Of a stretch of 64,000 nucleotides of DNA, positions 5,262 through 31,150 are shown piece by piece (the stretch's first letter is position 1; the number at the start of each line of letters is the position of its first letter). The stretch is taken from the NCBI GenBank assembly GCA_907165135.1, contig OU015567.1:15500001-15564000 (forward strand), read 5' to 3'. The position numbers were made by a program, and so were the translations under genes. Under the pieces are notes generated by a model. That model ran no database searches and had not been told where the DNA came from. It worked only from the letters and a program-made list of their open reading frames with translations. This DNA is from Oikopleura dioica. Its lineage: Eukaryota > Animalia > Chordata.

Positions 5262-5628
5262 GTTCTGACACCTTGAAAGTTCAATTATTGAAACGTTGAA
5301 AGATTACCTGGCTGAAAATGATAAATAAACACGGTGAAATCTGAATTGGAGCAATTCAATGTCAACACAGAGTCTTTGACATTGAAATTTTAATTTTATT
5401 ATTGTTCTTTTGGCAAAATAAAGCGGATCGTTCACTTTTCACTCTATTGTTCTTTTCAATTTTATCGTCTTTCCAATAAGAGGGTAAATTGTACATTTGC
5501 GTATTGACACAATGAATACGAATCAGCGCGCCGTTGACATTGCCAAGCCAAACAATGCATGGAAATGTTTATAGCTTCGAAAAACTCCTACAAACCGGCA
5601 AAAGTTGAAATTTTGAAAAAAACGAGAA

Positions 5629-7736
5629 ATGAAAGTGAGCAAACCTGACATTTTATCCGAGCAAAAAATACGAAAATGGCTGAAAACAATAAAACTCAAG
5701 AGGGAATCAACAAGGACATTAAAATGTCGCATAATTGAGTCTATTGAGAGAATGAATATGAAAAAGGACAAATTTGCACAAGAGTGGACGAGGGTCAAAC
5801 TGGTGAAAGGTATTGGACATTTATACGACAAAGATGGCACTAAACTGCAGGAGTTCACTTTCTCCCCGTATCAGAAAGAACTTTTTAACCAAGCCGCGCA
5901 GACAGATGAAATTCTCGATATTGAAAGATCCGATTTGATGCCAGAGAAGGGTTTTTGGATCAAAAAAGTACTCAAGAAGCAAATTATATCCGAAGGTGGA
6001 GAAGCTATCGTCTTTCTTGAGACTTTCAACGAGCTTGAAGTTGCCGTCCGAGTTCAAGCATTTGATCCAGCACTATTTACGTCGAATTACAAAGAGGAGT
6101 ATTATCAGTACAAGGTCAATTTGTGTTCGGATTTCTCTGCCGCTGTCGATAAAAAGACCGACGAAGAAAATGTTATTCCGTATCACGAAAATATTGTTAT
6201 GCATTATACGAATATTGAAATATTCGACAGTTTTGACATTGAGCAGAAAGACTGTTTGGGATGGATAACAATAATGGAAAAATGTGGGGCAAACTTGAGA
6301 ACAAAGCTGAAGTCTGAGAATTTAAAAATTGACAAAAGAAGGCGGATTGCATTACAAATCAAAAATGGATTTCAGTATCTGTATAATCTTGGAATCGAAC
6401 ATTGTGACTTGAAGTTGGAGAATGTTTTGGTCCAGAAGACAAAGGTTAAACTTATTGACTTTGGACTTGTGAGAGCTGTAACTGGAAAGCAAAGTTTTCG
6501 ACAGATGGGCTATGCAAGATATGGATCGAAGTTTAAAAGGATAAACAGTTTATGTACTATCAAGTTGTATTATTACTTCATAAATCTATTTTCAGATGCC
6601 GGCTCTGCGGCATTTTCAAAATCGAGTCAGCTTGTTGGGCAATCTGGCTACCTTCGAAAGAATATTTATGTATTTTTATTCTCCGATTGGATATCTGCAT
6701 GGGCCCTCTTATTTCAACCTGTTGATTGTTTGGACAAGAAACAAGTCAATCAAGCTATCAAAGTAAACTCATTTCAATGTTCATTATTCAAAAATTATTA
6801 GAAGTCCAAAGCAGAATGGATGCGCGGCTCCCGGGAACCGACAGTTGAAGAAATTAATCATACGGAAATCGTCTCGGTCAAAACTCAATGTCAGCATGCT
6901 CTCGCCGACGACAATCTACAGCGGACCATTGGCCTTTGCAATTTGAAGCATGCATTTACGAAGATCATGAATATGGATATGAAAAATTTATCGAAGAATG
7001 TTCTCGATCAAAAAGATTCAAAGCTTTGCGTTGTCGTTGCTGTGACAACTTTAGTGAAATATGCATTGGTTCATGATTTAAATTTTGAGGATAAGCGTGA
7101 CGATTTTACGACTGAAAAGATCTTTATTTTATTGACGATGACAGTCTACCCAAGAAGTCTAGCAGGATTAAATTTGAATCCAAAGAAAGAGGAGCTGCGT
7201 TATCAGTCATCTAACATTCTAAGTCTTTTAAATAGAATGAAGAACAAAACATTCTTGAACGAAAGTGGCTGGGAAATGATTCGCACAAATGCCCCTTTTA
7301 AACCTCAAAAGTCGATTTGTGATTTCGAAGAAGGTAAAGTCTTCATTAAAACTCTTTGCGTATGATGTTATTTTTAGTAATTCTCAACGAAAATTTCAAA
7401 TTTGATAGACCACTTGCAGTTCTTGGGGCGTACTTGCACAAAGACAAACCAGAAGCTGAGTTTCATCAAATGGTTCTTGACCGGGTTGAATCAAAATGTT
7501 ACGTTATTAAAAACTCTCAAATCGACATTGGAGGTGCGACTCTGAGAATTCCTATCAAAAGAGAATACTACGCACCAGAAGAATGCATGAAAAGAGCCGC
7601 ACGTCAGTGGAACAAGTATCTATGGGATTCAGATGGAAGACGAATGTATCTTGTCAATGAAAATTGCAACAATATGGGGAGGAACAAATGGTATCTTCTT
7701 CCACAAGCGTATTCTTTCAAGCTCATTCCAAGGTGA
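5629..7736 (+). CDS. Atypical protein kinase-like domain fused to C-terminal papain-like (Cys-His-Asn) peptidase domain, copy A
   Basis: Kinase motifs ISEGGEAIVF, VAVRVQ, HCDLKLEN, IDFG; then VLDQKDSKLC (Q-x5-C) and FHQMVLDRVESKCYVIKNS (H-x15-N). Exons 5629-~6550, ~6596-6760, ~6803-7333, ~7378-7736. Confidence 0.8.
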
Positions 7737-19931: not shown

Positions 19932-21764
19932 ATGCGTCGCGCGGCCTTTCTGGGACAACGAGTAGCTCCAGTGAGCCAGACTCGCCACAAGCATGACTCC
20001 TTGTTGCCTGCTGGCGCTGGCGGACGATCATCCTTCTCCGGTCAGGCTGCTACTGTCTTCGGCGCTACTGGACAAGTCGGCCACACTCTCGTCAACAACC
20101 TCGGACGAATGGGATCGTCAATTGTTCTTCCCCACCGGTACACCCCTTTTCAACAAGCTCTTCTTTTCCCAACCGCTCTTTAGGAACTCTACCGAAGCTT
20201 GGAGATCGAACGACTTGCGATTGATGGGCGATCTCGGCACTCTTCAGTTTTACCAGCACTTCGATGTCGCTCACCGAAGCGATCGAGAAGTCATGGAGAC
20301 TATTGAACATTCCAACGTCGTCTACAACGTCATCGGCACTCGAAGAGGTAGCAAAGTGCCTCCATTAGCTTTTTTAACAAAACCTTCAAGAGCTGAAGAA
20401 CTACACTCGCCGCGAGACAAACGTCGACTGGCCCGAGCGACTTGCCAAGCTCGTTGCCGCCAAGGGCGACGGAACCAGACTGGTTCATCTTGTCCCACTC
20501 AACACTGGCAACGAAGAATACTGCAAGTACTCCAAGATCTTGGAAGAGCACACCGAAGCTTGCGAGAAGATTCGAGACGCCTACCCCGATGCTATCATCG
20601 TCAAGGTAATCTTGTTAAAGAATCATCGGTTTGAACTGGATTTGGCAATCTGTCAGGGAACCTGACTCAGGGTCTTGAAAGAGCTTTGATAGACGCGGTT
20701 ATATTAAATTTATTTCGGGACCCTGACTCAGGTTCCTCCGCAGGTTATTGAGCTCAACTGTTGAATATCCTGGAATTAACCGCTCATTCACATTTATATG
20801 TAGTCTGCTGATGTTGTCGGCTGGAACGACTACTACTGCAACTGGTGGTCGATGAACAACGAGTATTACCAGCGATCGCTCTCGTATATCGGTGCCTTCC
20901 CACTTATGTACGGTGGTGGTGCCCAAACCTACGTTTCGTAAGCCATCGTTTCCCCTTTCTCCACTTTTATCGCAACTTTAGCCCTATTGTTCGACGAGAT
21001 CTGGGTCGCGCCCTCGCCAAGATCGGTGCTCACCCCGACTCCGATGGACACGACTTCGAACTCTTCGGAAACAAGGTCTTCAAGCTCGTCGAGCTGGTCG
21101 AATTTATGTACGACGTCAAGTGGCAAACGATGCGACACTTGAACACTAAGCGAACGGCCAGCGCCCGATGCGCCAGATTGGATGTTGATATGGACTACTT
21201 CCCTTACGATCGTAAGATAATACGAGTTAAATAAATTGCTACCTGTTTTCAGCCCTCGGCGAGCTTGTCGCTGACCCAGTCGACCTTACAACGATGCAGA
21301 AACTCAAGCGAAAGCTCCTCCGACTCCACCTCGCCAAGCTCAACTGGCCACGATTCAACGTCGCTGGCATCCGAGCTCTTGACTACGTCCACCGAAACAA
21401 GTCGATGTACGCCGACTGGACCAGCGAGGTTTGCATATTTTTTACAATCCAGCGGTTTATAAGACTTTTAGGACCACTTTAACATGATGAACATGTCTCA
21501 CAAGCCTACCTTCGAGAACCCCGGCTTTGCCGATATCGGAGTTAAACTGAACGATCCTCTTATTGCTATTCACGAGTGTATGGCCAACTTTTCGGTAAGC
21601 CCCGCTACCAATAACGAAAAATAGTCCATTTCTAGCCCGGAGCTTACCCATCTGGTTTTGGATTAACCGACAACTTCAAACGACTTGATCAATTCGACCT
21701 TCCACCAACCTACGAATGGGACGTCGTGCACACTCAGGAAGCGAAGAGACTGGCATACGCATAG
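19932..21764 (+). CDS. NDUFA9: NADH dehydrogenase 1 alpha subcomplex subunit 9 (SDR fold)
   Basis: [33 protein letters not shown]; DLRLMGDLG; [10 protein letters not shown]. Confidence 0.92.
20636..20757. mobile_element. MITE, CTGGG family (degenerate copy 4, NDUFA9 intron)
   Basis: ctggatttggcaatctgtcagggaacctgactcagggtcttgaaagagct ... accctgactcaggttcctccgcaggttattgagctcaa. Confidence 0.6.
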
Positions 21765-21999
21765 GAAAATACAAAGTCGCGATAATTTAAAATAATTACG
21801 TTTCAAATTGTATTTTACATGTCTAAGTTCAAATCCCTTTCTGTTCAAAGCTATTTATTATTGGGATGAAATAAACTACCCTTCATGAAAAGAGAACTTT
21901 TCGTCGTGTTTATTCATTAAAGAAAGTGATATTAAAGCGAACGAAATCGCAGGCAGTGGTCATTTCATACATCACAAGTTGTCGTCTTCCATCTCTGTC

Positions 22000-22815
22000 T
22001 GTGCGGCTTGTTATTTCTTTTCTATTCAACTCTTCCCCTGTGACTCCGTTGATTTCTTGAGCCACCACGAAGAATCGATTGTATTCGCCGCCGATTTTGA
22101 ACCAGAGATAGTTCCAGCCATTTCCTCCATCTCCAACGAGCCTCGAAGCTCCTTTGAATTCTAGCTCCCATCCCTCGTTTGTGACTTTGATCTTTTGCTC
22201 GTACGAAAACTAAAACAATCAGGGACCGAAGTTCGCATTTAGTTACCTTTAAATTTATTGCATGAGCACCTAGCGAGAGTAACTTCAGGATATTGATGAG
22301 GTCCATTCCCTTCATTTCATCCCTGACGCCGCCGTAGATTGTAGATTTGTCACTCACTTCTCCGATTTTGACGAAATGGCCGACCCCTCCTTTCGGCCCT
22401 AATTTCCACAAAGCATGATCCCTTCTTTTCTCTTTTATACGTTCCTAACTGAAGGTTACCACCTAGACAGGAATTTTCAGAAATCACCTGGGCTAAATTG
22501 GGAGTAAGTCCGGACGCCCCCGATTTTCTTCGTTCCGCTTCTTTCTTCGCCTTTTCAAAGTCGAATATCTGATTGTTGCATGCATCTCTTTTCTATGCTA
22601 AAATTGGTAATAGGATTTTTGAATAATTTTACCTGGAGAAAGTCGAACGCTTCTTTGAGTTTTATGAACTTCTCTTTCGCCCTTGGATCGTTTGGGTTCT
22701 TATCAGGATGCTTCTCTTTAGCTAGTTTTCTGTACGCACTCGTTATGTCTTTCAGCGTTGCTGAAGGTTGCACGCCGAGTATTGCGTAATAATCAATGAC
22801 CGACTTGTAACTCAT
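22000..22815 (-). CDS. DnaJ/Hsp40 J-domain protein (3' extent uncertain)
   Basis: DYYAILGVQPSATLKDITSAYRKLAKEKHPDKNPNDPRAKEKFIKLKEAFDFL with HPD motif. Confidence 0.75.
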
Positions 22816-23369
22816 CTTGTTTTTTGCGGTACTGGCAGGCGGGCTACAAGATTACTGATCAGATATTTTTTTCCACACAAATGACTCAGAGGCAGAGTCT
22901 CGAAAATAGCGGAAATTTCGTTGACTTATTTTTCGTGCTATTTTGCCGAAGTCTGGGAGACAACAAACTATTTTTCAAACACTGTATTTGAGGGGATATT
23001 TTACCAAAAGAAAACAAATCATTATATAATTAATAATTTCTCTAGAGTCTAGACTTTTTGTAGAATTATTTGTGGGTGCTGAAAAGCGTCGCCTTGCGCC
23101 GCCCGGTCCGGTACAAACCGAGTCTCGTCTGACCGAATCATGACCAAAGAGAGTGCTCGGAACCAGGGTTCTAAACGGACATGTCCGTGTACGGATTTTA
23201 TCCGTGTCTGTCCGGTCTTATCCGTACGGACTGTTTTAAAATTTAACGGGATTTTCGGGATCTCAGTTGTTTTCTATCTCTCCATTGACTCTCCATTGAA
23301 AAGAATCCTTATAATCTCAATTTATTCACAGATTAATAAATTTGGCTTGTCGCAGTTTAAACATTTGTT

Positions 23370-26300
23370 TCACATTGTTTCACATTTTAAAGGTAAACAT
23401 TTATTTCGTCTAAAAGAGGAATTTCCGGATGAATTCGAACCAAGAGAAGATGAATCTGACTCTTCTTGCGCTGGAGTAAGAGTAATCGAATATGCCTGCG
23501 GAAGAATATGCCATGTTTCCGTTTTCATGAAAAACTGTTCGTTTGTTAAAGCAAGAAACTCGTTGTTGTCTCCAATATAAACAAAATCATTGTAGTAATT
23601 ATAACAATCTTCCATTATTGCTGCAGAAGCGTAGTACGGTCGGTCAAGAGGGATTCTTATTTGAGAATCAGAATGGTCGATGAGAGTATTTTGGAGAATG
23701 AACTCGGAGTTTTCTACTCGGTCTAGCACCATTTGATGGAAAATTATGGATCCGTCGGGACTCAGATATGCACCGGTAACAAGCAGCACCAGAGTTTGAA
23801 AAACGGTAATAAATCTCGTTTTTTATTAAAAGCACATAAGAAAAATTAATGAAAAAACGCTTATTCATTTTCAAACTCTAGTCAGTGGACGGCGGAAAAC
23901 AAAGTTTTGGTGGAGGAGTACTAAATAATGGTCAGATTAAATTTTGATTTTTGTAACCTCTTTCAAAGTTAAAATCGCCTTTTGTGCTTCCATAAAAATC
24001 CATATCTTTTATAATATTCCATCCACTGTCATTCAAATAAGTTTTGAATTTCATTCTTCTGAGAAGCAATTCTATTTCATTTTCTTGAAATTCTTGTTCT
24101 TCTTTTTTCGGATTTAGATTGAAACCAGCCAAACTGCGCGGATAAATTATCATCGTAAGAAATGTGAAAATTTTTTCGAGAGTAAAATAATCTTCCATTT
24201 TTGAATCACATATTTTTAAATCATTTTTGATTGCCCATCGAATAAGCACTGAAATCGTAATGGGGACAGAGAGATTGCTTTCTTTTTGGTTTAAAACATT
24301 CTTCGTCAAGTTTTCGAAATCAAAATTCATTTGTTTTGTCATTTGACGTTTGAGATTGGCCATTGCTGAAGATTTCGACAAATTTGGATCGTCAAAGCAA
24401 AAATCAGAAGCTGCGTTTTTGAGAGAAATGATTTTTGACGTGCTTTCGATGTCTTCGATTGTGGGAGAATTTCTTGAAAGCCACCCAGCATAAGAGGCCT
24501 GAAAAATATATTTCCTACATATTAATTACATAAAAACTGACCATAAGTTCGCTTTTAATCATCTCTCTCTCAGTTTCGTCGATAGGCTTGAATAGAAGAT
24601 TCCATGCGGTCTTCCAATTGCAAAGAATCAGAATATGAAGTGGTGATTCTTCTCCTCTGGCGTTGTCACAAAGTTGCCAACTATTTGAAAAAGCAGCTGA
24701 GCCAGCATCTACAAAATACGAGATAATAATGAAAACTTAAATTTGTACTAGTACTTAAATATAGTTTTTTACGGATTTTTTGGACATTTTTTCAATTTTA
24801 AAGGGTTTTGGTGCGACATTTCTGAAAAATTCTTTATCAAATCTTTGGACATTTTTCGAGCAAAAATTTTTAGCTTCCAGGTTTCTTATAAGAAATGGCT
24901 TTTTTATTATCAAAAATCTTAATTTTTCTTTAAGAAAGACAAAATTGAAGATTTATCCCGTGCACTAAGACATATTTTTTTGTCTTTGGAGGAGTAAGGA
25001 GAAGAAGATAATCGAGCTCTTCCTGAAAAATATTTAGAATCGCACATAGAGTCGGACAATTATTTTGGGAGCGTGTATCAAATTTTTGGATATCTTTGAG
25101 AAAATCGTGCGACAAAAAAGTCCAAAGATACCATAATTAACTGTATAATGTAATGATGATATACTAGCATCATAGATAGTGAAAAAAAACTCTGAGTACT
25201 CTGCACTGACACTACTTTTAATGATGTTAATCTTTTCGAATTCAAAATCACACCATTGAATACAGTAAGACTTACAAAGATAACGCGATTTTTGATACTT
25301 GCTTCCTGATCTTGCATATCCAAGTCGGCGATAACTCTGACGCTTTGTTTGTTCTGATATCAATCCAAAATCAATGATCTTAGCCTCTCCATTTTTCAAC
25401 AAAACATTTTCTGGCTTCTTATCGAAGTGCTCGATTCCAATTTTATTAAGATAGTGAAGTCCTTCGGTTACCCCAATAAGAATCCTCTTGCGTTCTTCTA
25501 AACTAAGATCTTCATTTTTCAACCTGGAACGAAGATCTGAGTCGCATTTCTCCATCAATGTTATCCAACCAAGGCATTCTTCATGCTTCTTGTCATAGGA
25601 GGAAAAAATTTCGATATTACAAAAATTTTTTATGACATTTTGATGAAATGGGATGACCGGCTTTTCGTCTTCTTCGTCATCAGTAGCAATGTCGTAATCT
25701 TGAAAAAAGTCAATTCCAAATCGAATTTTCGATTACCTTTTGATAAATGGATAACGAATAAGAGTTTATCGTTCGTATCTGCGAACAGAGCCGAGTCAAA
25801 AGCTTGAACTCGAACAGCAACTTCAAATTCTCCAAATTTTTCGTTGAATATAATCGCTTCACCTCCAGACGAAATTATTTTTTGCTCAAAAGATTGATCC
25901 AAAATCCAGTTTCCAGTTTCTTCTTTCAATTCTGATCGGGAAATTTTGCGTCCTTCAAACCATGGATATGCGTCGAGGATCGTTTTTTGAAATGAAGTCA
26001 TCGACCATTCTTCTGTTTCAGAAAATCTTCCACGATACACTTTTCCTTTTCCATTTTCAAAAATAACGTGTTCCCATCCAGCAGACCGATAGTTCTCAAA
26101 CTGCATTCTCTCAACTGACAAAATCAATCTGTCGATATCATCTCTGCTTGTCGTTCTTCTTAATTTCAATTTAAAATCTTTGAGCCATCCTCCGATTCCT
26201 TCTTTTGTCAATTCTCTTGGATGCGTCGAGAGTTGCTCCGAGGTTTGCCCCTTTCTATTTGCGGGCGGGTGTCCATATTTTATACTCGGGTCTTTCTGGA

Positions 26301-28571
26301 ATTTTTCATCGCCTTCGTCGGAACCAAGTTTTATCGAGAACGCCGTATTCGAAATGTACCATGTTTCTTGCCTCATCTGCAAATGAGCCTGCTCGAATTC
26401 GTTTAAATATGTTCGGTCAACTGGTATTGTAACTCGGGAATAATTTTCGTACGTATTTTGCAGTACATAATTCCCACTTTGAACACTTTCAAGAGTCATT
26501 TGATGATAAAATATGTCTTTTTCGACAGGAACTCCAGCAGTTGCAGGAAGATATCCACAAGTGACTGTCAAAGGCCGATCATCAAACTGGAAACCCTTAT
26601 GCAGCGTGACTTAAAAAATAAGCGCGATTCAAATGGTTACTGAAACAAAAATCCGTTGTTATACTAGACACTTACGATATTGTACATTTTTATTAATAAA
26701 TTTAGAAACTGCCCATACAGGTCAAAATGGAAACATTATTTGCTTATTTTAAACATAGACTAAATTGCAAACAAACCTGGTTTATAATCAAAGTTCCCCT
26801 TTGCGTGTCCGATCTCAGAAATAATCTCCCATCCTCTGTTATTCAAATAGGTTTCATATTTTAGCCTGTCTAAAAGTGATGTGACCACGGTCCTTTGATT
26901 ATGAATCTCTTCTTTTCTTGGATTCAAATTAAGACCACTCAAGCTACGAGGAAAAACGACCATTGTCATAACATATAAAATATTTTCCAAGGAGTAGTAT
27001 TCGTTCATCTCTCTCGCACCCATCTTCAAATCATTTTCTAGAGCCCATCTCAATAAAATAGTAACGGAGATAGGGACACAAAGATTCGTATCCTTCTGGT
27101 CAAGAATATCAGGAGATAGATTCATAAAATTTATGTTTGTAAATCTTTTTAATTGCTGTTTTAAATTTGCCATCACGCAAGATTTCATCATATTTTCATC
27201 AGGTTCAAGATCTTGCAATTCACTTTGAAGAAAAATTATTTCTTCTACACCGTTTATATGTCTATCTTTTATGTCAGCCATCGTTGAGTGAGTATTCAGC
27301 CAGTCGGCTTTTATAGTCTTAAAATTGCTGTTTACTCATTATATTGCATAAAAAAGCCTTACAATGAGTTTATTCCGTATATCTTTTCTTATTTGTTCAT
27401 TTTTTATCGGAGCAAAGAGTAGCTTCCAGGCTGTCGGCCACCGGGATAAAATGAATGCAAAAATGCTATTGTTATTTTCACCACTTCTAGCAATAATATT
27501 TGATGTTTTGCAGAATGCAATCGTTCCTGCGTCTATGAAAAAATTGTAAGTAAATATGGAGAAAAATATTCATTCTCTTCATATTTAACTTACACAGATG
27601 ATTTCCATATCTGTACTTGCTCCCTCTTCTCGTATATCCCATCTCGCGATAACGAACTTCGTTTGAGCTCTGTTGGACAATGCCAAAATCAATAAGCTTA
27701 GGTTTTCCATTTCGAAATAAGATATTTTCCGGTTTAATATCCATATGAGCAATATTGAAGTCTTCTAAGTGACGAAGGCCAGCTTTCACTGCAATGCCGA
27801 TTTCTTTTCGTTCTTTAAGAGATAAATAGGCAAAATTTGACTTTTCATGCGCACAGAGTCTTTTTCTTAAATTTCGCTCATCACATAGCTCCATAATTGT
27901 GATCCATCCTAAGCAGTCTTTCGAATCTTCCTTGCTAAAAATTTCGATGTTCGAGTAGTGCTTGATGACATTTGCGTGAAATGGTAGACGTAGCTGGTCG
28001 TATTCTATGCAAAATTTAATAAATATTTGAGAAAAATCGGGTGAGTTCTACCTATAGACATATGAACCTTAAAATTCATTCTGTCCTCTTTCAAATCCTC
28101 CGTGAAAATTGCAGCATCAAAGGCTTGGACTCGAACCGCGTATTCTGACGTTCCGAATTTTTCTTTTAAAACAATTGCTTCACCTCCAATAGAAATTATA
28201 CTGCCACAAGAGAATTTGCGCAGATTCCATTTTCCAGTTTCCTCGTCAAGATCTGATCTTTTTATCCAATCACCACAATAACCAGGGTTCTCCTCAAGAA
28301 TCTTTTTTTGAAATTCCGTTATTTTCCATGATTCACGATCTTTTATAAAATCAACAGTTCCTTCTCCATTTTTAAAAATGACTTTATTCCATCCCGCAGC
28401 TTCTACTTTGTCGAAATCCATGCGCTCTACGGATAAAAGAAGACGATCCAAATCATCTCTGCTAGTTTCTCTCTCTAGTTTTTTTCTAAAAGAGCATAGC
28501 CATGTTTCGACATTCTCCCTCGTCAAATTCATGACTTGTGAGTTTCTTTGTTGTCGATGCCGAAAAATCAT
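23370..28571 (-). CDS. Tandem kinase-like / papain-like peptidase polyprotein (kinase C - protease C - kinase B - pseudo-protease B)
   Basis: Kinase C: ISIGGEAIVL, YAVRVQ, HMDIKPEN, IDFG. Protease C: ILDQKDTNLC, YHQMTLESVQSGNYVLQNT. ORF 25630-26571 runs without a stop from protease C into kinase B (ISSGGEAIIF, VAVRVQ, HFDKKPEN, IDFG). Protease B: VLNQKESNLS, FHQMVLDRVENSEFILQNT. Confidence 0.78.
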
Positions 28572-28710
28572 ATATTTCTTTAGTCAATATTTGGCGACCA
28601 AAGGAATACAATCGTAGATCTGTGTCCGCGTGCTAACAAAACGAAGAGCATCACTTTTCATTTAAAATGTCAGTATTTCCGGGAAGATTTTATTGAGCGA
28701 AACCAAATCA

Positions 28711-31150
28711 TCAAATAGTCATGTACAGATCAAGCGAGTCCCAGAAATCACATCGTTCTGCCCGCGGATCATCCATTTGAATTTTGAATCGTCGAGTACC
28801 TACAAGAGCTCAAGTTGTTTTGTAAACCTTCTGTGACTTTACCTTCATCGCCAATGTCAAGAAACTTATTGTTTATTTCAAAATGTTCCCAGTAAACTTG
28901 ATCTTGGTGAAAATATTCCAGTGGGTTTCCGAGATAGTCTTAGAATAATATTGAAAATAATTATTTTAAAGTTTGATTCACTGTTTGGGTCGCCAGTTCG
29001 AATGAAATTTGCGATGTACTGTTGAATGCTGTATTGAAACTTTGCATCCTCTTCGTATTTTGGGTCGCTTCGGAAGGTGTCATTGAAGAACCAGTGCTCA
29101 CTCGCTCCGTGGGAAACTCCTTCTTCGATCGATTGCCAAGGAAGACGCTGGCTAATGCGGGCCAAGTAGAGTCCAGTTTCGCGATTGTGGCTGCCGGTGG
29201 GATAGCCATCAGTCATGCATCTTTTCATATTGCAGTACCAGGTGAAATCGGTCAGCCATTCATCAGCTTTATGAATACATTCGGAACCATCTTCAGGGCA
29301 GTCGTAGTAGCCAAAGTCTTTGAGCGCTTGGAAGTCCTCGGGAGAAAGAAGCTTCGAAAAGAAGAGATCCCAGCTTTCTTGGCAAAGATGTTGAGAGTCT
29401 GGATAAGTTGTATTCGGGCAGTTTTTGCCCTGAAAAATCGGGTTCACAAACATGTATCCTTCGTTATCAGTGACGTCGATTATAGTGGGCTTGTCGTGCA
29501 TTTCTCCCTTTCGAAAGTGAAAAAATGGCATTTCCTTGAGCATGCCTGTATTGATGATGGGCGCGTAGGGTTCTGCAGCGATTGTTGGCCGGTCGAAGTT
29601 TCCAAAAGGCAGTACTTGCTTCAACTCCCAAGCTGCAGCGTTGATCTCTTTTGCCGACTTGCCCATCATACACGAGATTATTTCAGACGTCGTTGGTCCA
29701 AGACAATGAGGCAGAACACCCGCAGGAGCTTCGCAGCAATGGACAAGATTGGCGATTCCCTGCAAAATCTCTTCGCCTTCGACATTGTTGTAGAATGGAA
29801 TTCCGTTTGGACCGGAATAAGCAATTGCTTTATGGAATAAATTTCGACTATAAATAGAGTTAGTTGACCTTTATCTTCTTTTCGGGGAAAGTATGGGAAC
29901 TCAGAAGACCGTTTCAATTTTATGGGCTGTCAAATATCAAACTGCAGTTATTTGGTCAAATTCGTTCAAACTCGTTCGCCTCACATTTTGACGCATGTAA
30001 AATTACCTGCTCGGCATAACCAGATGAGCATGCATACTTTGGCCACCCGCACTCATTCCTCCGATTGTGATGCTTTCACGGTCCCCAGCAAAGAACTCAA
30101 ATGATAATCACATTTTAGGCCATTCGAGCGACTTACTTTGGCATTTTCAGCTGTCCAAATCATCGCCATTTGCTGATCCATCAATCCTTGATTTCCAGAC
30201 GTAATTTTTCCTTCATAGTATTCTAGGCCATGTTCTTGGCTAATTCTGTCATCAAGGAACTCCGAAAACAAAAATCCAAAAGCACCAAGACGATAATTTG
30301 AGCTCAACACAACTAGATTCTGTTCTGATGCAATTATGGCGCCTTCGATGGGAGAGACGTCCTGATTTGATCCACCCATGAATGCACCTCCGTGAAAGTA
30401 AAGGAAGATCTTGAGGATTTCGTTATTCTCAATGGCTCTTCTGGGGACGAAAATGTCAATGTAAGCGCAGTCTTCTGTCATGAAATCAGTCGCTTCGAAC
30501 GCGCCAGGGCAAGATGGCGAAGTCTCAGTAGCAAAGTAGACAGTCTTCCCGTCAATTATATGCGTTTTCGGGTAACCGTCAAGACCTCGCTCTATAATTG
30601 GAGCTTTCCAGCGAAGATCTCCAACTGGCGGCTTCATGAATGGAATTCCCTGCATAACAACAACATCAGGAAACTCAGTGTGAAGATAGCCCCGGATCGT
30701 TCCCAAGTCGCCGAAATCAACATCGTAGTACTCACCATCGAATGGCGGCATGGTCGATGTGGTGGTTGTCGTTGAAGTCGTAGAGGTGGTTTTTGTAGTC
30801 GTAGTGACAATTGTCTCACAATTTCCAAGCATACAGTCTGCGTAAAGTTCCCATGCGTTCTCATAGCAGAGAGCACTCAAATTTTCATCTTGAAGGTCTT
30901 GACATTTTATCTGCTCATTTATGTAGCGACTTTCGCATTGTTCCTGGCAGTGGCAGTCGTTTGAGCAATCTTTATGGTTGTCCTCGTTGCAAACTGCATT
31001 ACACTCGACGCATTCATCCAGACACGCAGCAACATCTTGAGCTACCTGCTCACATTCAAACTCGCACAGAGAAAGCTTTCCTCGAAGCCTTGATTCGACT
31101 TGAGAAAAGAGAAAAATGTCAAACAGCGCATAATCTCTTCTGAGAAGTAA
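28711..31150 (-). CDS. Type-B carboxylesterase with N-terminal Cys-rich module and Thr-rich linker (5' end uncertain)
   Basis: GIPFMKPPVGDLRWKAP, EDCAYIDIFVP, FHGGAF, NYRLGAFGFL, GNQGLMDQQ, nucleophile ITIGGMSAGG, HGASEH, YIANFIRTGDPN. Confidence 0.88.

What the first reader, a model, noticed from the sequence alone, without database searches (positions are those of the whole stretch)
23370..28571. Kinase-protease-kinase-pseudoprotease tandem polyprotein
Seen: ORF 25630-26571 reads without a stop from the His/Asn half of one protease-like domain (YHQMTLESVQSGNYVLQNT) through a linker into the next kinase-like unit. Two full kinase+protease units therefore appear joined in one reading frame. 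The upstream unit keeps the catalytic Cys (DQKDTNLC); the downstream unit has Ser there (NQKESNLS) but keeps His and Asn. Known: active/inactive tandem pairs and kinase fusion proteins occur in plant immune receptors. Inference: a self-processing or decoy-sensor signalling polyprotein, possibly for tunicate immunity. I do not recognise this architecture from any described family.
Basis: partly seen in the sequence, partly recalled or inferred. Interest (0 to 1): 0.88.

Follow-up and report, generated by a model that had tools for sequence, protein, structure and literature searches.

The report
Two kinase-peptidase genes fused in tandem
Two neighbouring copies of an unstudied Oikopleura-only gene family (an odd kinase-like domain joined to a papain-type cysteine peptidase domain) have merged into one reading frame, most likely by loss of a stop and a start codon, and the second copy is decaying, so this looks like an evolutionary by-product and not a designed polyprotein.

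Summary
On the minus strand, eight exons with seven GT-AG introns (28571 to 23958) give 1,215 codons without a stop. They cover unit A (N-terminal domain, kinase-like domain, peptidase-like domain), a 46-codon linker, and unit B.

- **Catalytic residues:** unit A keeps Gln/Cys/His/Asn. Unit B has Ser for Cys.
- **Peptidase fold:** a family model matches only clan CA peptidases (C1, C39, staphopain, UfSP), at a modest Z of 7.6 or less.
- **Kinase domain:** it is a divergent protein kinase with Arg at the beta3 Lys position in every member.

Three points were missed:
- Unit B's His/Asn exon cannot be joined in frame through the conserved GT donor and an AG acceptor.
- Unit A's peptidase lacks about 33 residues that the family has.
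- The locus is a tandem pair from a family of more than 50 copies known only from Oikopleura. Members are normally one unit of about 700 aa, and many copies are broken.

The window is O. dioica OKI2018_I69 chr2. Its annotation here is a chimera that ignores unit B. Transcript support is one 200-nt metatranscriptome contig across the linker.

Best reading: a read-through fusion of tandem paralogues. Self-processing, decoy and immunity roles are untested. The scan met this family earlier on other DNA of this genome.

The parts
28052..28571 (-). Exon 1 of the fused gene: unit A N-terminal domain and start of the kinase-like N-lobe (glycine loop 28187-28173, beta3 Arg 28133-28131). ATG at 28571; the second ATG at 28532 aligns better with the family's start.
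27594..28004 (-). Exon 2: unit A kinase-like core (HMDIKPEN 27747-27724, DFG 27690-27682).
   Evidence: Pfam Pkinase 51.5 bits against a cut-off of 31.7; splice sites; junction also used by annotated model P0111
27363..27532 (-). Exon 3: unit A short kinase C-lobe remnant.
26777..27317 (-). Exon 4: inter-domain segment and N-half of the unit A peptidase-like domain (Gln 27098-27096, Cys 27080-27078).
25737..26609 (-). Exon 5, the junction exon: unit A peptidase C-half (His 26505-26503, Asn 26457-26455), the linker, unit B N-terminal domain and unit B glycine loop and beta3 Arg (25812-25810).
   Evidence: 0 stops in frame against 13 and 19 in the other frames; 0.89-0.96 of its 31-mers are present in five DNA runs of two studies
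26188..26325 (-). 46-codon hydrophilic linker, the former 3' end, spacer and 5' end. AGA at 26217-26215 sits where unit A and other members have their start ATG. The first in-frame ATG of unit B comes only at 26106-26104, inside the conserved N-terminal domain. No AATAAA or ATTAAA.
   Evidence: metatranscriptome contig 26151-26350 spans it
25276..25698 (-). Exon 6: unit B kinase-like core (HFDKKPEN 25429-25406, DFG 25372-25364).
   Evidence: Pfam Pkinase 46.4 bits
24709..25275 (-). Unusually long intron (567 nt) in the unit B activation segment. The same intron is 61 nt in unit A and 42 nt in gene C.
24542..24708 (-). Exon 7: unit B kinase C-lobe remnant.
23958..24498 (-). Exon 8: unit B inter-domain segment and peptidase N-half, with Ser (TCT 24270-24268) at the nucleophile position.
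   Evidence: metatranscriptome contig 24130-24407
23370..23822 (-). Open frame for the unit B peptidase C-half (His 23738-23736, Asn 23690-23688, Ser/Asp-rich tail, stop 23372-23370). It is one base out of frame with exon 8 via GT 23957 and AG 23816. It can be joined in frame only by skipping the His strand (acceptor AG just upstream of 23722) or by a GG donor after 24002. AATAAA at 23827 lies in the intron.
5629..7736 (+). Third paralogue (gene C): an intact single unit of 660 aa in 4 exons (5629-6553, 6596-6762, 6802-7333, 7378-7736). It has Gln/Cys/His/Asn and its own stop directly after the peptidase domain. It shows the normal family form.

Best explanation
The locus is a tandem pair of paralogues from a gene family known only from Oikopleura. 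The normal product of this family is one unit of about 650-720 aa. A unit has an N-terminal alpha/beta domain of unknown fold, then a divergent protein-kinase-like domain with Arg in place of the beta3 Lys and a short C-lobe, then a papain-fold (clan CA, C39/C1-like) cysteine peptidase domain with Gln, Cys, His and Asn at papain spacing. Here the upstream copy no longer has a stop after its peptidase domain and the downstream copy no longer has its ATG (AGA at the homologous codon). The former spacer of about 35 codons is now read through as a hydrophilic linker, and both units lie in one frame of at least 1,215 codons. This much is shown by the sequence. What follows is inferred. If the locus is expressed, the product is a two-unit protein. 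Unit A may still be a peptidase, although about 33 residues are deleted from its beta-barrel half. Unit B's peptidase module is inactive: it has Ser for Cys, and its His/Asn exon is not joinable in frame at the conserved intron. The fusion is best read as a by-product of tandem duplication in a fast-turnover family, with the second peptidase module on the way to loss, not as a purpose-built self-cleaving polyprotein. For the family as a whole, the likeliest mode of action is a cysteine peptidase whose activity or targeting is governed by the attached kinase-like, possibly non-phosphorylating, domain. That is inference only.
For: Continuous frame with seven GT-AG introns. Unit B has introns at the same positions and phases as unit A. 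Exon 5 is open only in the coding frame, and the linker has no poly(A) signal. AGA stands at the codon aligned with the start Met of unit A and other members, and the first in-frame Met of unit B lies 37 codons further on, inside the conserved domain. Single-unit proteins of about 700 aa are the rule among more than 50 O. dioica members, and none longer than 795 aa was found in a search that allowed up to 1,391 aa. Gene C in the same window ends with a stop right after the peptidase domain. Family-wide counts: Cys 57 and Ser 2 at the nucleophile position, His 61/61, beta3 Arg 37/37, HxD 50/52, DFG 45/45. Fold of the peptidase model: all 50 best VIA matches are clan CA peptidases (Der f 1 Z 7.6, PCAT1 C39 domain Z 7.4, cathepsin B, staphopain, UfSP, ATG4). 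ESM Atlas matches are C39-like, both for my model and for the Atlas's own model. Kinase fold: all listed Foldseek matches of the full-length model are protein kinases at E about 1e-7. Frame problem of unit B's last exon. A 33-residue gap in unit A. Exon 5 is present in five DNA runs. One contig from an oligo-dT metatranscriptome spans the whole linker. Decayed copies exist elsewhere.
Against: There is no direct evidence that one mRNA covers both units. The three raw-read RNA runs laid on the stretch gave only fragments of paralogues. The metatranscriptome contig is 200 nt at depth 2 and could be unspliced operon RNA or DNA carry-over. Units A and B are only 42-52% identical, so the duplication is old, yet unit B's exons are all still open. 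That argues for long-term selection on unit B and against simple decay. The one-base frame offset lies next to A6 and T5 homopolymers in what I recall, without having checked it here, to be a Nanopore-based assembly, so it may be an assembly error. O. dioica also uses non-canonical splice sites (bioRxiv 10.64898/2025.12.04.692336).
Confidence: 0.55

Rival explanations
1. A functional two-unit protein. An active kinase-peptidase unit is paired with a catalytically dead Ser-type unit that acts as a regulator, decoy or substrate trap. Alternatively, it is a polyprotein that unit A's peptidase cuts in the linker.
For: Both units have stayed open over an old duplication at 42-52% identity. Unit B keeps all kinase motifs and the His, Asn and Gln of the peptidase. 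The segment of unit B upstream of its first Met is well conserved with unit A, as expected if it is translated as part of the fusion. Cys/Ser pairs exist in other papain-like families; Plasmodium SERA5 is among the structural matches.
Against: No cleavage-site motif, no orthologue and no expression data. No second two-unit member was found among the family proteins retrieved. Unit B's His/Asn exon is not joinable in frame at the conserved site. Unit A, the supposed active unit, has a 33-residue deletion in its peptidase. The kinase domains show no active/inactive asymmetry.
Confidence: 0.12
2. Two separate gene products from one operon-like transcript. Unit B would be released by spliced-leader trans-splicing or made by internal initiation at Met 26106-26104, and the open linker would be incidental.
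For: Operons and SL trans-splicing are abundant in O. dioica, and tandem same-strand genes with short spacers are typical (bioRxiv 10.64898/2025.12.04.692336). An open linker in the right frame has a chance expectation of about 3%, which is not negligible.
Against: No ATG precedes the conserved N-terminal domain of unit B. A start at the first in-frame Met (26106) lies about 27 codons into the domain, counted from its conserved Trp, and removes most of the roughly 30 best-conserved residues. Exon 5 has no poly(A) signal. The one RNA-library contig that covers the linker carries no leader or poly(A).
Confidence: 0.13
3. The whole locus is a silent or dying pseudogene pair. The open frame is a remnant and no protein is made.
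For: Three oligo-dT RNA runs under the species label gave no reads of this gene. The annotation has no model for unit B or for unit A's first exon. There is a frame offset at the last exon, a deletion in unit A and a 567-nt intron in unit B. Earlier follow-ups found other copies broken and untranscribed.
Against: 1,215 codons plus a further 150-codon exon carry no stop in AT-rich DNA. All seven introns modelled keep GT-AG. Two exact or near-exact contigs occur in a plankton metatranscriptome. It is not known whether the RNA runs come from the lineage of this assembly, and no control stretch could be laid.
Confidence: 0.15

Closest known systems
Clan CA papain-like cysteine peptidases, structurally nearest C39 (PCAT1/ComA bacteriocin-processing domains) and C1 (Der f 1, cathepsin B)
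   Same: The predicted fold matches. The nucleophile lies just before the first long helix, His lies on a beta-strand and Asn on the next strand. Spacing is Gln-6-Cys and His-16-Asn, as I recall for papain (Gln19, Cys25, His159, Asn175). All 50 best structural matches belong to this clan.
   Different: No sequence-level membership: no Pfam family at E up to 1 and no PDB sequence match at E up to 10. Z is only 7.6 or less. The domain is not attached to an ABC transporter, has no pro-peptide and no signal for secretion in the window's copies. It is fused behind a kinase-like domain. Found only in Oikopleura and in unnamed marine metagenome fragments.
Eukaryotic protein kinase superfamily and pseudokinases
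   Same: Pfam Pkinase hits above cut-off, a kinase fold, and HxDxKxxN and DFG kept in nearly all members.
   Different: Arg replaces the beta3 Lys in 37 of 37 members. There is no APE motif. The predicted C-lobe looks short, with only short helices after the activation segment. Similarity to any solved kinase is weak (E 3e-5 or worse). Whether it phosphorylates anything is unknown.
Plant tandem kinase-pseudokinase resistance proteins (e.g. wheat WTK1/Yr15, PMC6170490)
   Same: Two kinase-like domains in one polypeptide that arose by duplication or fusion.
   Different: Here each kinase brings its own N-terminal and peptidase domains. The two kinase domains have the same motif state. The asymmetry is in the peptidase (Cys against Ser). 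There is no link to immunity.
Plasmodium SERA family (papain-like proteins with Cys or Ser at the nucleophile position)
   Same: A paralogous family in which a few members carry Ser where the others carry the catalytic Cys. SERA5 is among the structural matches (Z 6.3).
   Different: Unrelated in sequence, SERA proteins are secreted and there is no kinase domain. In the Oikopleura family Ser is rare: 2 of 59 counted, plus unit B.
Read-through fusion of tandem duplicate genes
   Same: Same-strand neighbours, loss of the stop and the start codon, and the spacer converted to a linker.
   Different: Nothing unusual. This is the ordinary mechanism that I think applies.

Membership tests
Eukaryotic protein kinase domain (Pfam PF00069) | Profile match above the curated gathering score | tested here: met
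   Unit A 51.5 bits and unit B 46.4 bits against a cut-off of 31.7; the matches are partial (profile positions 77-161)
Eukaryotic protein kinase domain (Pfam PF00069) | Bilobal kinase fold | tested here: met
   Full-length family model (pLDDT 75, pTM 0.70). All 50 listed Foldseek matches are protein kinases at E about 2e-7 to 9e-7, and at least 500 matches have E of 0.001 or less
Eukaryotic protein kinase domain (Pfam PF00069) | Beta3 (VAIK) lysine | tested here: not met
   Arg in units A, B and C and in 37 of 37 family members
Eukaryotic protein kinase domain (Pfam PF00069) | Catalytic loop HxDxKxxN and DFG | tested here: met
   HMDIKPEN/DFG in unit A and HFDKKPEN/DFG in unit B; family counts 50/52 and 45/45
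Eukaryotic protein kinase domain (Pfam PF00069) | APE motif and full C-lobe (helices G to I) | tested here: inconclusive
   No APE. Only short helices follow the activation segment in the model and the alignment. I could not inspect coordinates.
Eukaryotic protein kinase domain (Pfam PF00069) | Phosphotransfer activity | not testable with these tools
   Needs an ATP-binding and kinase assay
Clan CA papain-like cysteine peptidases | Papain fold (helical lobe plus beta-barrel lobe) | tested here: met
   Model of P0016:385-638 (pLDDT 72). All top 50 of 48,161 chains are clan CA, Z 7.6 to 4.3. Weak Foldseek matches to C39 and staphopain. Atlas C39-like matches at TM 0.41-0.56. Z is in the range where the tool warns of common arrangements; the uniformity of the list is what carries the call.
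Clan CA papain-like cysteine peptidases | Catalytic Cys before His in sequence, with Cys at the start of the central helix | tested here: met
   Met for unit A and gene C: Cys lies 3 residues before helix 31-44 and His159 on strand 157-167 of the model. Not met for unit B, which has Ser, TCT 24270-24268.
Clan CA papain-like cysteine peptidases | Oxyanion Gln about 6 residues before Cys and Asn/Asp about 16 after His | tested here: met
   Gln441/Cys447 and His583/Asn599 in the fused protein; the same spacing holds across the family
Clan CA papain-like cysteine peptidases | Sequence membership in a described family (C1, C39, C47 and others) | tested here: not met
   No Pfam hit at E up to 1 for any peptidase exon. 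No PDB sequence hit at E up to 10. A profile search of 1.84 billion proteins found only Oikopleura proteins and unnamed marine fragments.
Clan CA papain-like cysteine peptidases | Peptide-bond hydrolysis | not testable with these tools
   Needs the expressed domain, a Cys-to-Ala control and activity probes
Self-processing polyprotein | Cleavage between units by the embedded peptidase | not testable with these tools
   No recognisable site. A Gly-Gly just before unit B's N-terminal domain is not conserved in paralogues.
Tandem kinase-pseudokinase proteins | One active and one degenerate kinase domain in one polypeptide | tested here: not met
   Both kinase-like domains carry the same motif set: Arg at beta3, HxD and DFG
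Oikopleura kinase-peptidase family (unnamed; UniProt 'Protein kinase domain-containing protein') | N-terminal domain, then Arg-beta3 kinase-like domain, then Gln/Cys/His/Asn domain, 40-55% identity to members | tested here: met
   Units A, B and C align over the full length with P0016, P0022, P0032 and others

The most novel reading that the evidence does not exclude
The fused gene makes a single protein of about 150 kDa. In it a still-active kinase-peptidase unit is permanently tethered to a Ser-type dead copy of itself that regulates it, traps its substrate, or is released by cleavage in the linker. That would be an animal counterpart of active/decoy tandem signalling proteins, built from a kinase-peptidase module not described in any organism.
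Probability: 0.1. Interest if true: 0.75.

Novelty: new variant of a known kind. Interest (0 to 1): 0.42.

Why it matters
The family deserves attention more than this particular fusion does. A chordate carries more than 50 copies of a gene that welds a kinase-like domain with a family-wide Lys-to-Arg change to a cysteine peptidase domain detectable only by fold. No paper, no Pfam family for the peptidase part and no reliable annotation cover it. Knowing what it does (regulated proteolysis, a conflict or reproduction-related function, or something else) would add a new signalling module to animal biology. The tandem fusion gives a natural experiment: a Cys unit and a Ser unit in one frame. It is also a concrete warning about gene models in this compact genome, where the published model at this locus is a chimera with the neighbouring DnaJ gene.

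Tried and rejected
1. **RNA evidence.** Three raw-read oligo-dT runs under the species label gave only 10-38 partly fitting reads at 90-99% likeness (most at 90-95%), all on conserved motifs and all with loose ends. The only 'joint' (25823 to 28161, 16 foreign letters between) comes from reads of a paralogue that touch the glycine-loop/beta3 motif of both units. It is not a splice.
2. **Exact-product look-ups.** Three window ORFs were not found in public assemblies.
3. **Metagenome scan.** A scan with the junction ORF found no relative.
4. **Peptidase exon against PDB by sequence.** Nothing.
5. **N-terminal domain.** No usable Atlas match by features, and TM below 0.5 by structure. Its fold is left unassigned.
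6. **Transposon in the 567-nt intron of unit B.** There is no second copy in the window, only weak inverted repeats. Not supported.
7. **A second in-frame tandem fusion in another lineage.** The P0001 locus (L003) holds two tandem units about 600 nt apart, the first with a degraded peptidase part. They were merged only by annotation.
8. **C39-type membership.** Rejected. There is structural resemblance only, and Asn stands where I recall C39 peptidases have Asp.


Full report
**Observation.** The minus strand between 28571 and 23370 carries a string of ORFs that fall into two homologous series. tblastn of each piece against the window finds its partner in the other series at 30-49% identity. 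It also finds a third copy on the plus strand at about 5590-7730. I placed introns by eye from the sequence and by homology, then checked them in a script. Exons 28571-28052, 28004-27594, 27532-27363, 27317-26777, 26609-25737, 25698-25276, 24708-24542 and 24498-23958 are joined by seven GT-AG introns of 47, 61, 45, 167, 38, 567 and 43 nt. They give 1,215 codons without a stop. Three of these junctions are also used by the genome's own annotated model. Units A and B have introns at the same four positions and phases, and gene C shares three of them. The duplication was therefore genomic and carried the introns with it.

**The junction.** Exon 5 (873 nt) has no stop in its frame and 13 and 19 stops in the other two frames. 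Family proteins end two to four residues after the motif AYSxxL, or carry a short acidic/Ser tail. Gene C in this window ends that way, with a stop at 7734-7736. Unit A instead runs on through a 46-codon hydrophilic linker (26325-26188) into unit B. The last 10 or so residues of the linker are homologous to the N-terminal leader of unit A and other members (L-T-R/K-E-x4-W). The codon aligned with their start Met is AGA (26217-26215). The next in-frame Met (26106-26104) lies inside the conserved N-terminal domain. No AATAAA or ATTAAA occurs in exon 5. A shuffled linker stays open 9% of the time and the frames would match by chance one time in three, so the arrangement is unlikely to be accidental (about 3%) but not wildly so.

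- *Unit B's last exon.* The frame 23822-23373 is open for 150 codons and holds His, Asn and the family's C-terminal motifs. It is one base out of register with exon 8 when the conserved phase-1 donor (GT at 23957) and the nearest AG (23816) are used. That splice gives a stop after 16 codons. The only in-frame alternatives either delete the His strand (acceptor AG just upstream of 23722) or use a GG donor after 24002 and drop 15 residues. The offset sits beside A6 and T5 runs. An AATAAA at 23827 lies inside this intron.
- *Unit A's peptidase C-half.* It lacks about 33 residues that all other members have between the RxYY and WYLLPQAYS motifs, and its last motif is altered.

Neither unit is therefore a pristine copy.

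**Family context.** Word-based and profile searches found more than 50 O. dioica proteins at 40-55% identity. All are named only 'Protein kinase domain-containing protein' or 'unnamed'. Full-length members are 634-719 aa with one unit each. A profile of the peptidase domain, run over 1.84 billion representatives, gave 200 hits. Every named one is O. dioica and the rest are exon-sized fragments from ENA and JGI samples. A search that allowed proteins up to 1,391 aa returned nothing longer than 795 aa. A two-unit protein would be close to that length limit, so this negative is soft. Members often share contigs. One such locus has two separate same-strand genes about 1 kb apart. Another has two units about 600 nt apart, the first with a degraded peptidase part, merged by the annotation. 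Motif counts over all retrieved sequences:

| Position | Count |
|---|---|
| Nucleophile | Cys 57, Ser 2 |
| His | 61/61 |
| Beta3 | Arg 37/37 |
| HxD | 50/52 |
| DFG | 45/45 |

. Two earlier follow-ups of this scan, on other DNA of this genome, described the same family and found their copies broken by transposons or frameshifts and without transcripts.

**Folds.**
- *Peptidase domain.* I modelled it from a family member because the window's own domain is split by an intron. The model of P0016:385-638 with a 24-row alignment has pLDDT 72 and pTM 0.73.
- *VIA-align search.* Against 48,161 PDB representatives, the 50 best rows are all clan CA peptidases: Der f 1 (Z 7.6), Der p 1, the PCAT1 C39 domain (Z 7.4), cathepsin B, xylellain, ComA, staphopain, SERA5, UfSP1/2, ATG4, SpeB, IdeS, AvrRpt2 and ZUFSP. 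Z values are modest and the tool warns about that range. The uniformity of the list is what carries the call.
- *Other searches.* Foldseek gives the same families weakly. ESM Atlas searches give C39-like clusters at TM 0.41-0.56, both with my model and with the Atlas's independent model.
- *Catalytic geometry.* In the model the Cys lies three residues before the first long helix, His159 on a strand and Asn175 at the end of the next strand. Gln is 6 residues before Cys and Asn is 16 after His. This is the arrangement I recall for papain (from memory, not tested here). I could not open the coordinates to measure the triad geometry.
- *Full-length model.* The model of P0032 (pLDDT 75, pTM 0.70) gives only protein kinases by Foldseek (E about 1e-7). 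Sequence similarity to solved kinases is weak (E 3e-5 or worse).
- *N-terminal domain.* It has no assignable fold.

**Provenance and annotation.** Window 21000-30500 is 100% identical to O. dioica OKI2018_I69 chromosome 2 (GCA_907165135.1, OU015567.1, about 15.52 Mb). The published model there (g8366, 489 aa, P0111) starts inside unit A's kinase at 27642 and skips the stretch that holds the catalytic Cys. It leaves exon 5 within the peptidase C-half and joins the DnaJ gene at 22857-21913. Unit B and unit A's first exon belong to no model. That is a chimeric prediction of the kind reported to be common in this genome (bioRxiv 10.64898/2025.12.04.692336). It is no evidence against the fusion.

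**Reality of the DNA, and transcripts.** Five DNA runs from two studies hold 0.89-0.96 of exon 5's sampled words, although one may be the assembly's own source. On the RNA side, one oligo-dT plankton metatranscriptome has two contigs. One (24130-24407) lies in exon 8. The other (26151-26350, one mismatch) covers the entire linker with 25 nt of flank on the unit A side and 37 nt on the unit B side. This fits a continuous transcript. It is thin, however: depth 2, 200 nt, and unspliced operon RNA or DNA would look the same. Three raw-read runs under the species label gave only paralogue fragments. Whether they come from the lineage of this assembly is not known.

**Interpretation.** Shown: a two-unit open frame, the loss of stop and start at the junction, Cys against Ser, the papain-type and kinase-type folds, and the single-unit norm of the family. 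Inferred: the fusion arose by read-through between tandem duplicates, and unit B's peptidase module is being lost. I give this 0.55. The main counter-argument is the age of the duplication (42-52% identity) together with intact frames in all of unit B's exons, which points to long selection on unit B. That leaves room for a functional tethered pair (0.12), for two products from an operon-like transcript (0.13) or for a silent locus (0.15). Nothing links the family to immunity. A hydrophobic N-terminus in one subfamily hints that some members may be membrane-anchored or secreted, which would matter for any functional guess.

**Novelty and score.** The domains are known kinds. Their combination is not described in the searchable literature, and the peptidase domain has no sequence family. 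The tandem form is a variant of that undescribed family, and the scan has already met the family elsewhere in this genome. I rate it a new variant of a known kind, interest 0.42. The family is worth a study. This fusion is a curiosity until a transcript is shown.

Noticed in passing
window 21910-27642 (= L002:10001-15733): The published OKI2018_I69 gene model g8366 (P0111) is a chimera of part of unit A and the downstream DnaJ gene. Unit B and unit A's first exon are unannotated.
   Followed up: yes
P0029, P0032, P0033, P0011, P0012 residues 1-25; P0005, P0038, P0040, P0043 residues 1-13: One subfamily begins with a hydrophobic stretch of about 20 residues followed by basic residues (signal-anchor or signal-peptide like). 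Another begins with a shorter hydrophobic stretch. The window's copies show none in their first exons as modelled.
   Followed up: partly
window 28572-28652 (minus strand): An ATG at 28652 opens a short hydrophobic coding stretch (MLFVLLA...). A 32-nt GT-AG intron would join it in frame to the ATG at 28571. It may be a missed first mini-exon of unit A resembling the family's hydrophobic N-terminus, or it may be chance.
   Followed up: no
window 24709-25275: The intron in unit B's activation segment is 567 nt, against 61 nt (unit A) and 42 nt (gene C) at the same position. It has no other copy in the window and only weak inverted repeats, so its origin is unexplained.
   Followed up: partly
L003:6001-10694 (O. 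dioica GCA_000209535.1, FN653227.1): Another same-strand tandem pair of this family about 600 nt apart. The first unit's peptidase part is reduced to fragments, and the annotation (P0001) merges the two kinases into one protein.
   Followed up: partly
window 23827: An AATAAA lies inside the last intron of unit B. If used, it would give an mRNA whose protein ends shortly after exon 8, without the His/Asn half.
   Followed up: no
window 28878-29765 and upstream (minus strand); 21913-22857 (minus strand): The flanking genes are a carboxylesterase (Pfam COesterase, 764-aa model) upstream, with an AATAAA at 28877, and a DnaJ-domain gene downstream. All three genes are on the same strand with gaps of a few hundred bases.
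   Followed up: partly
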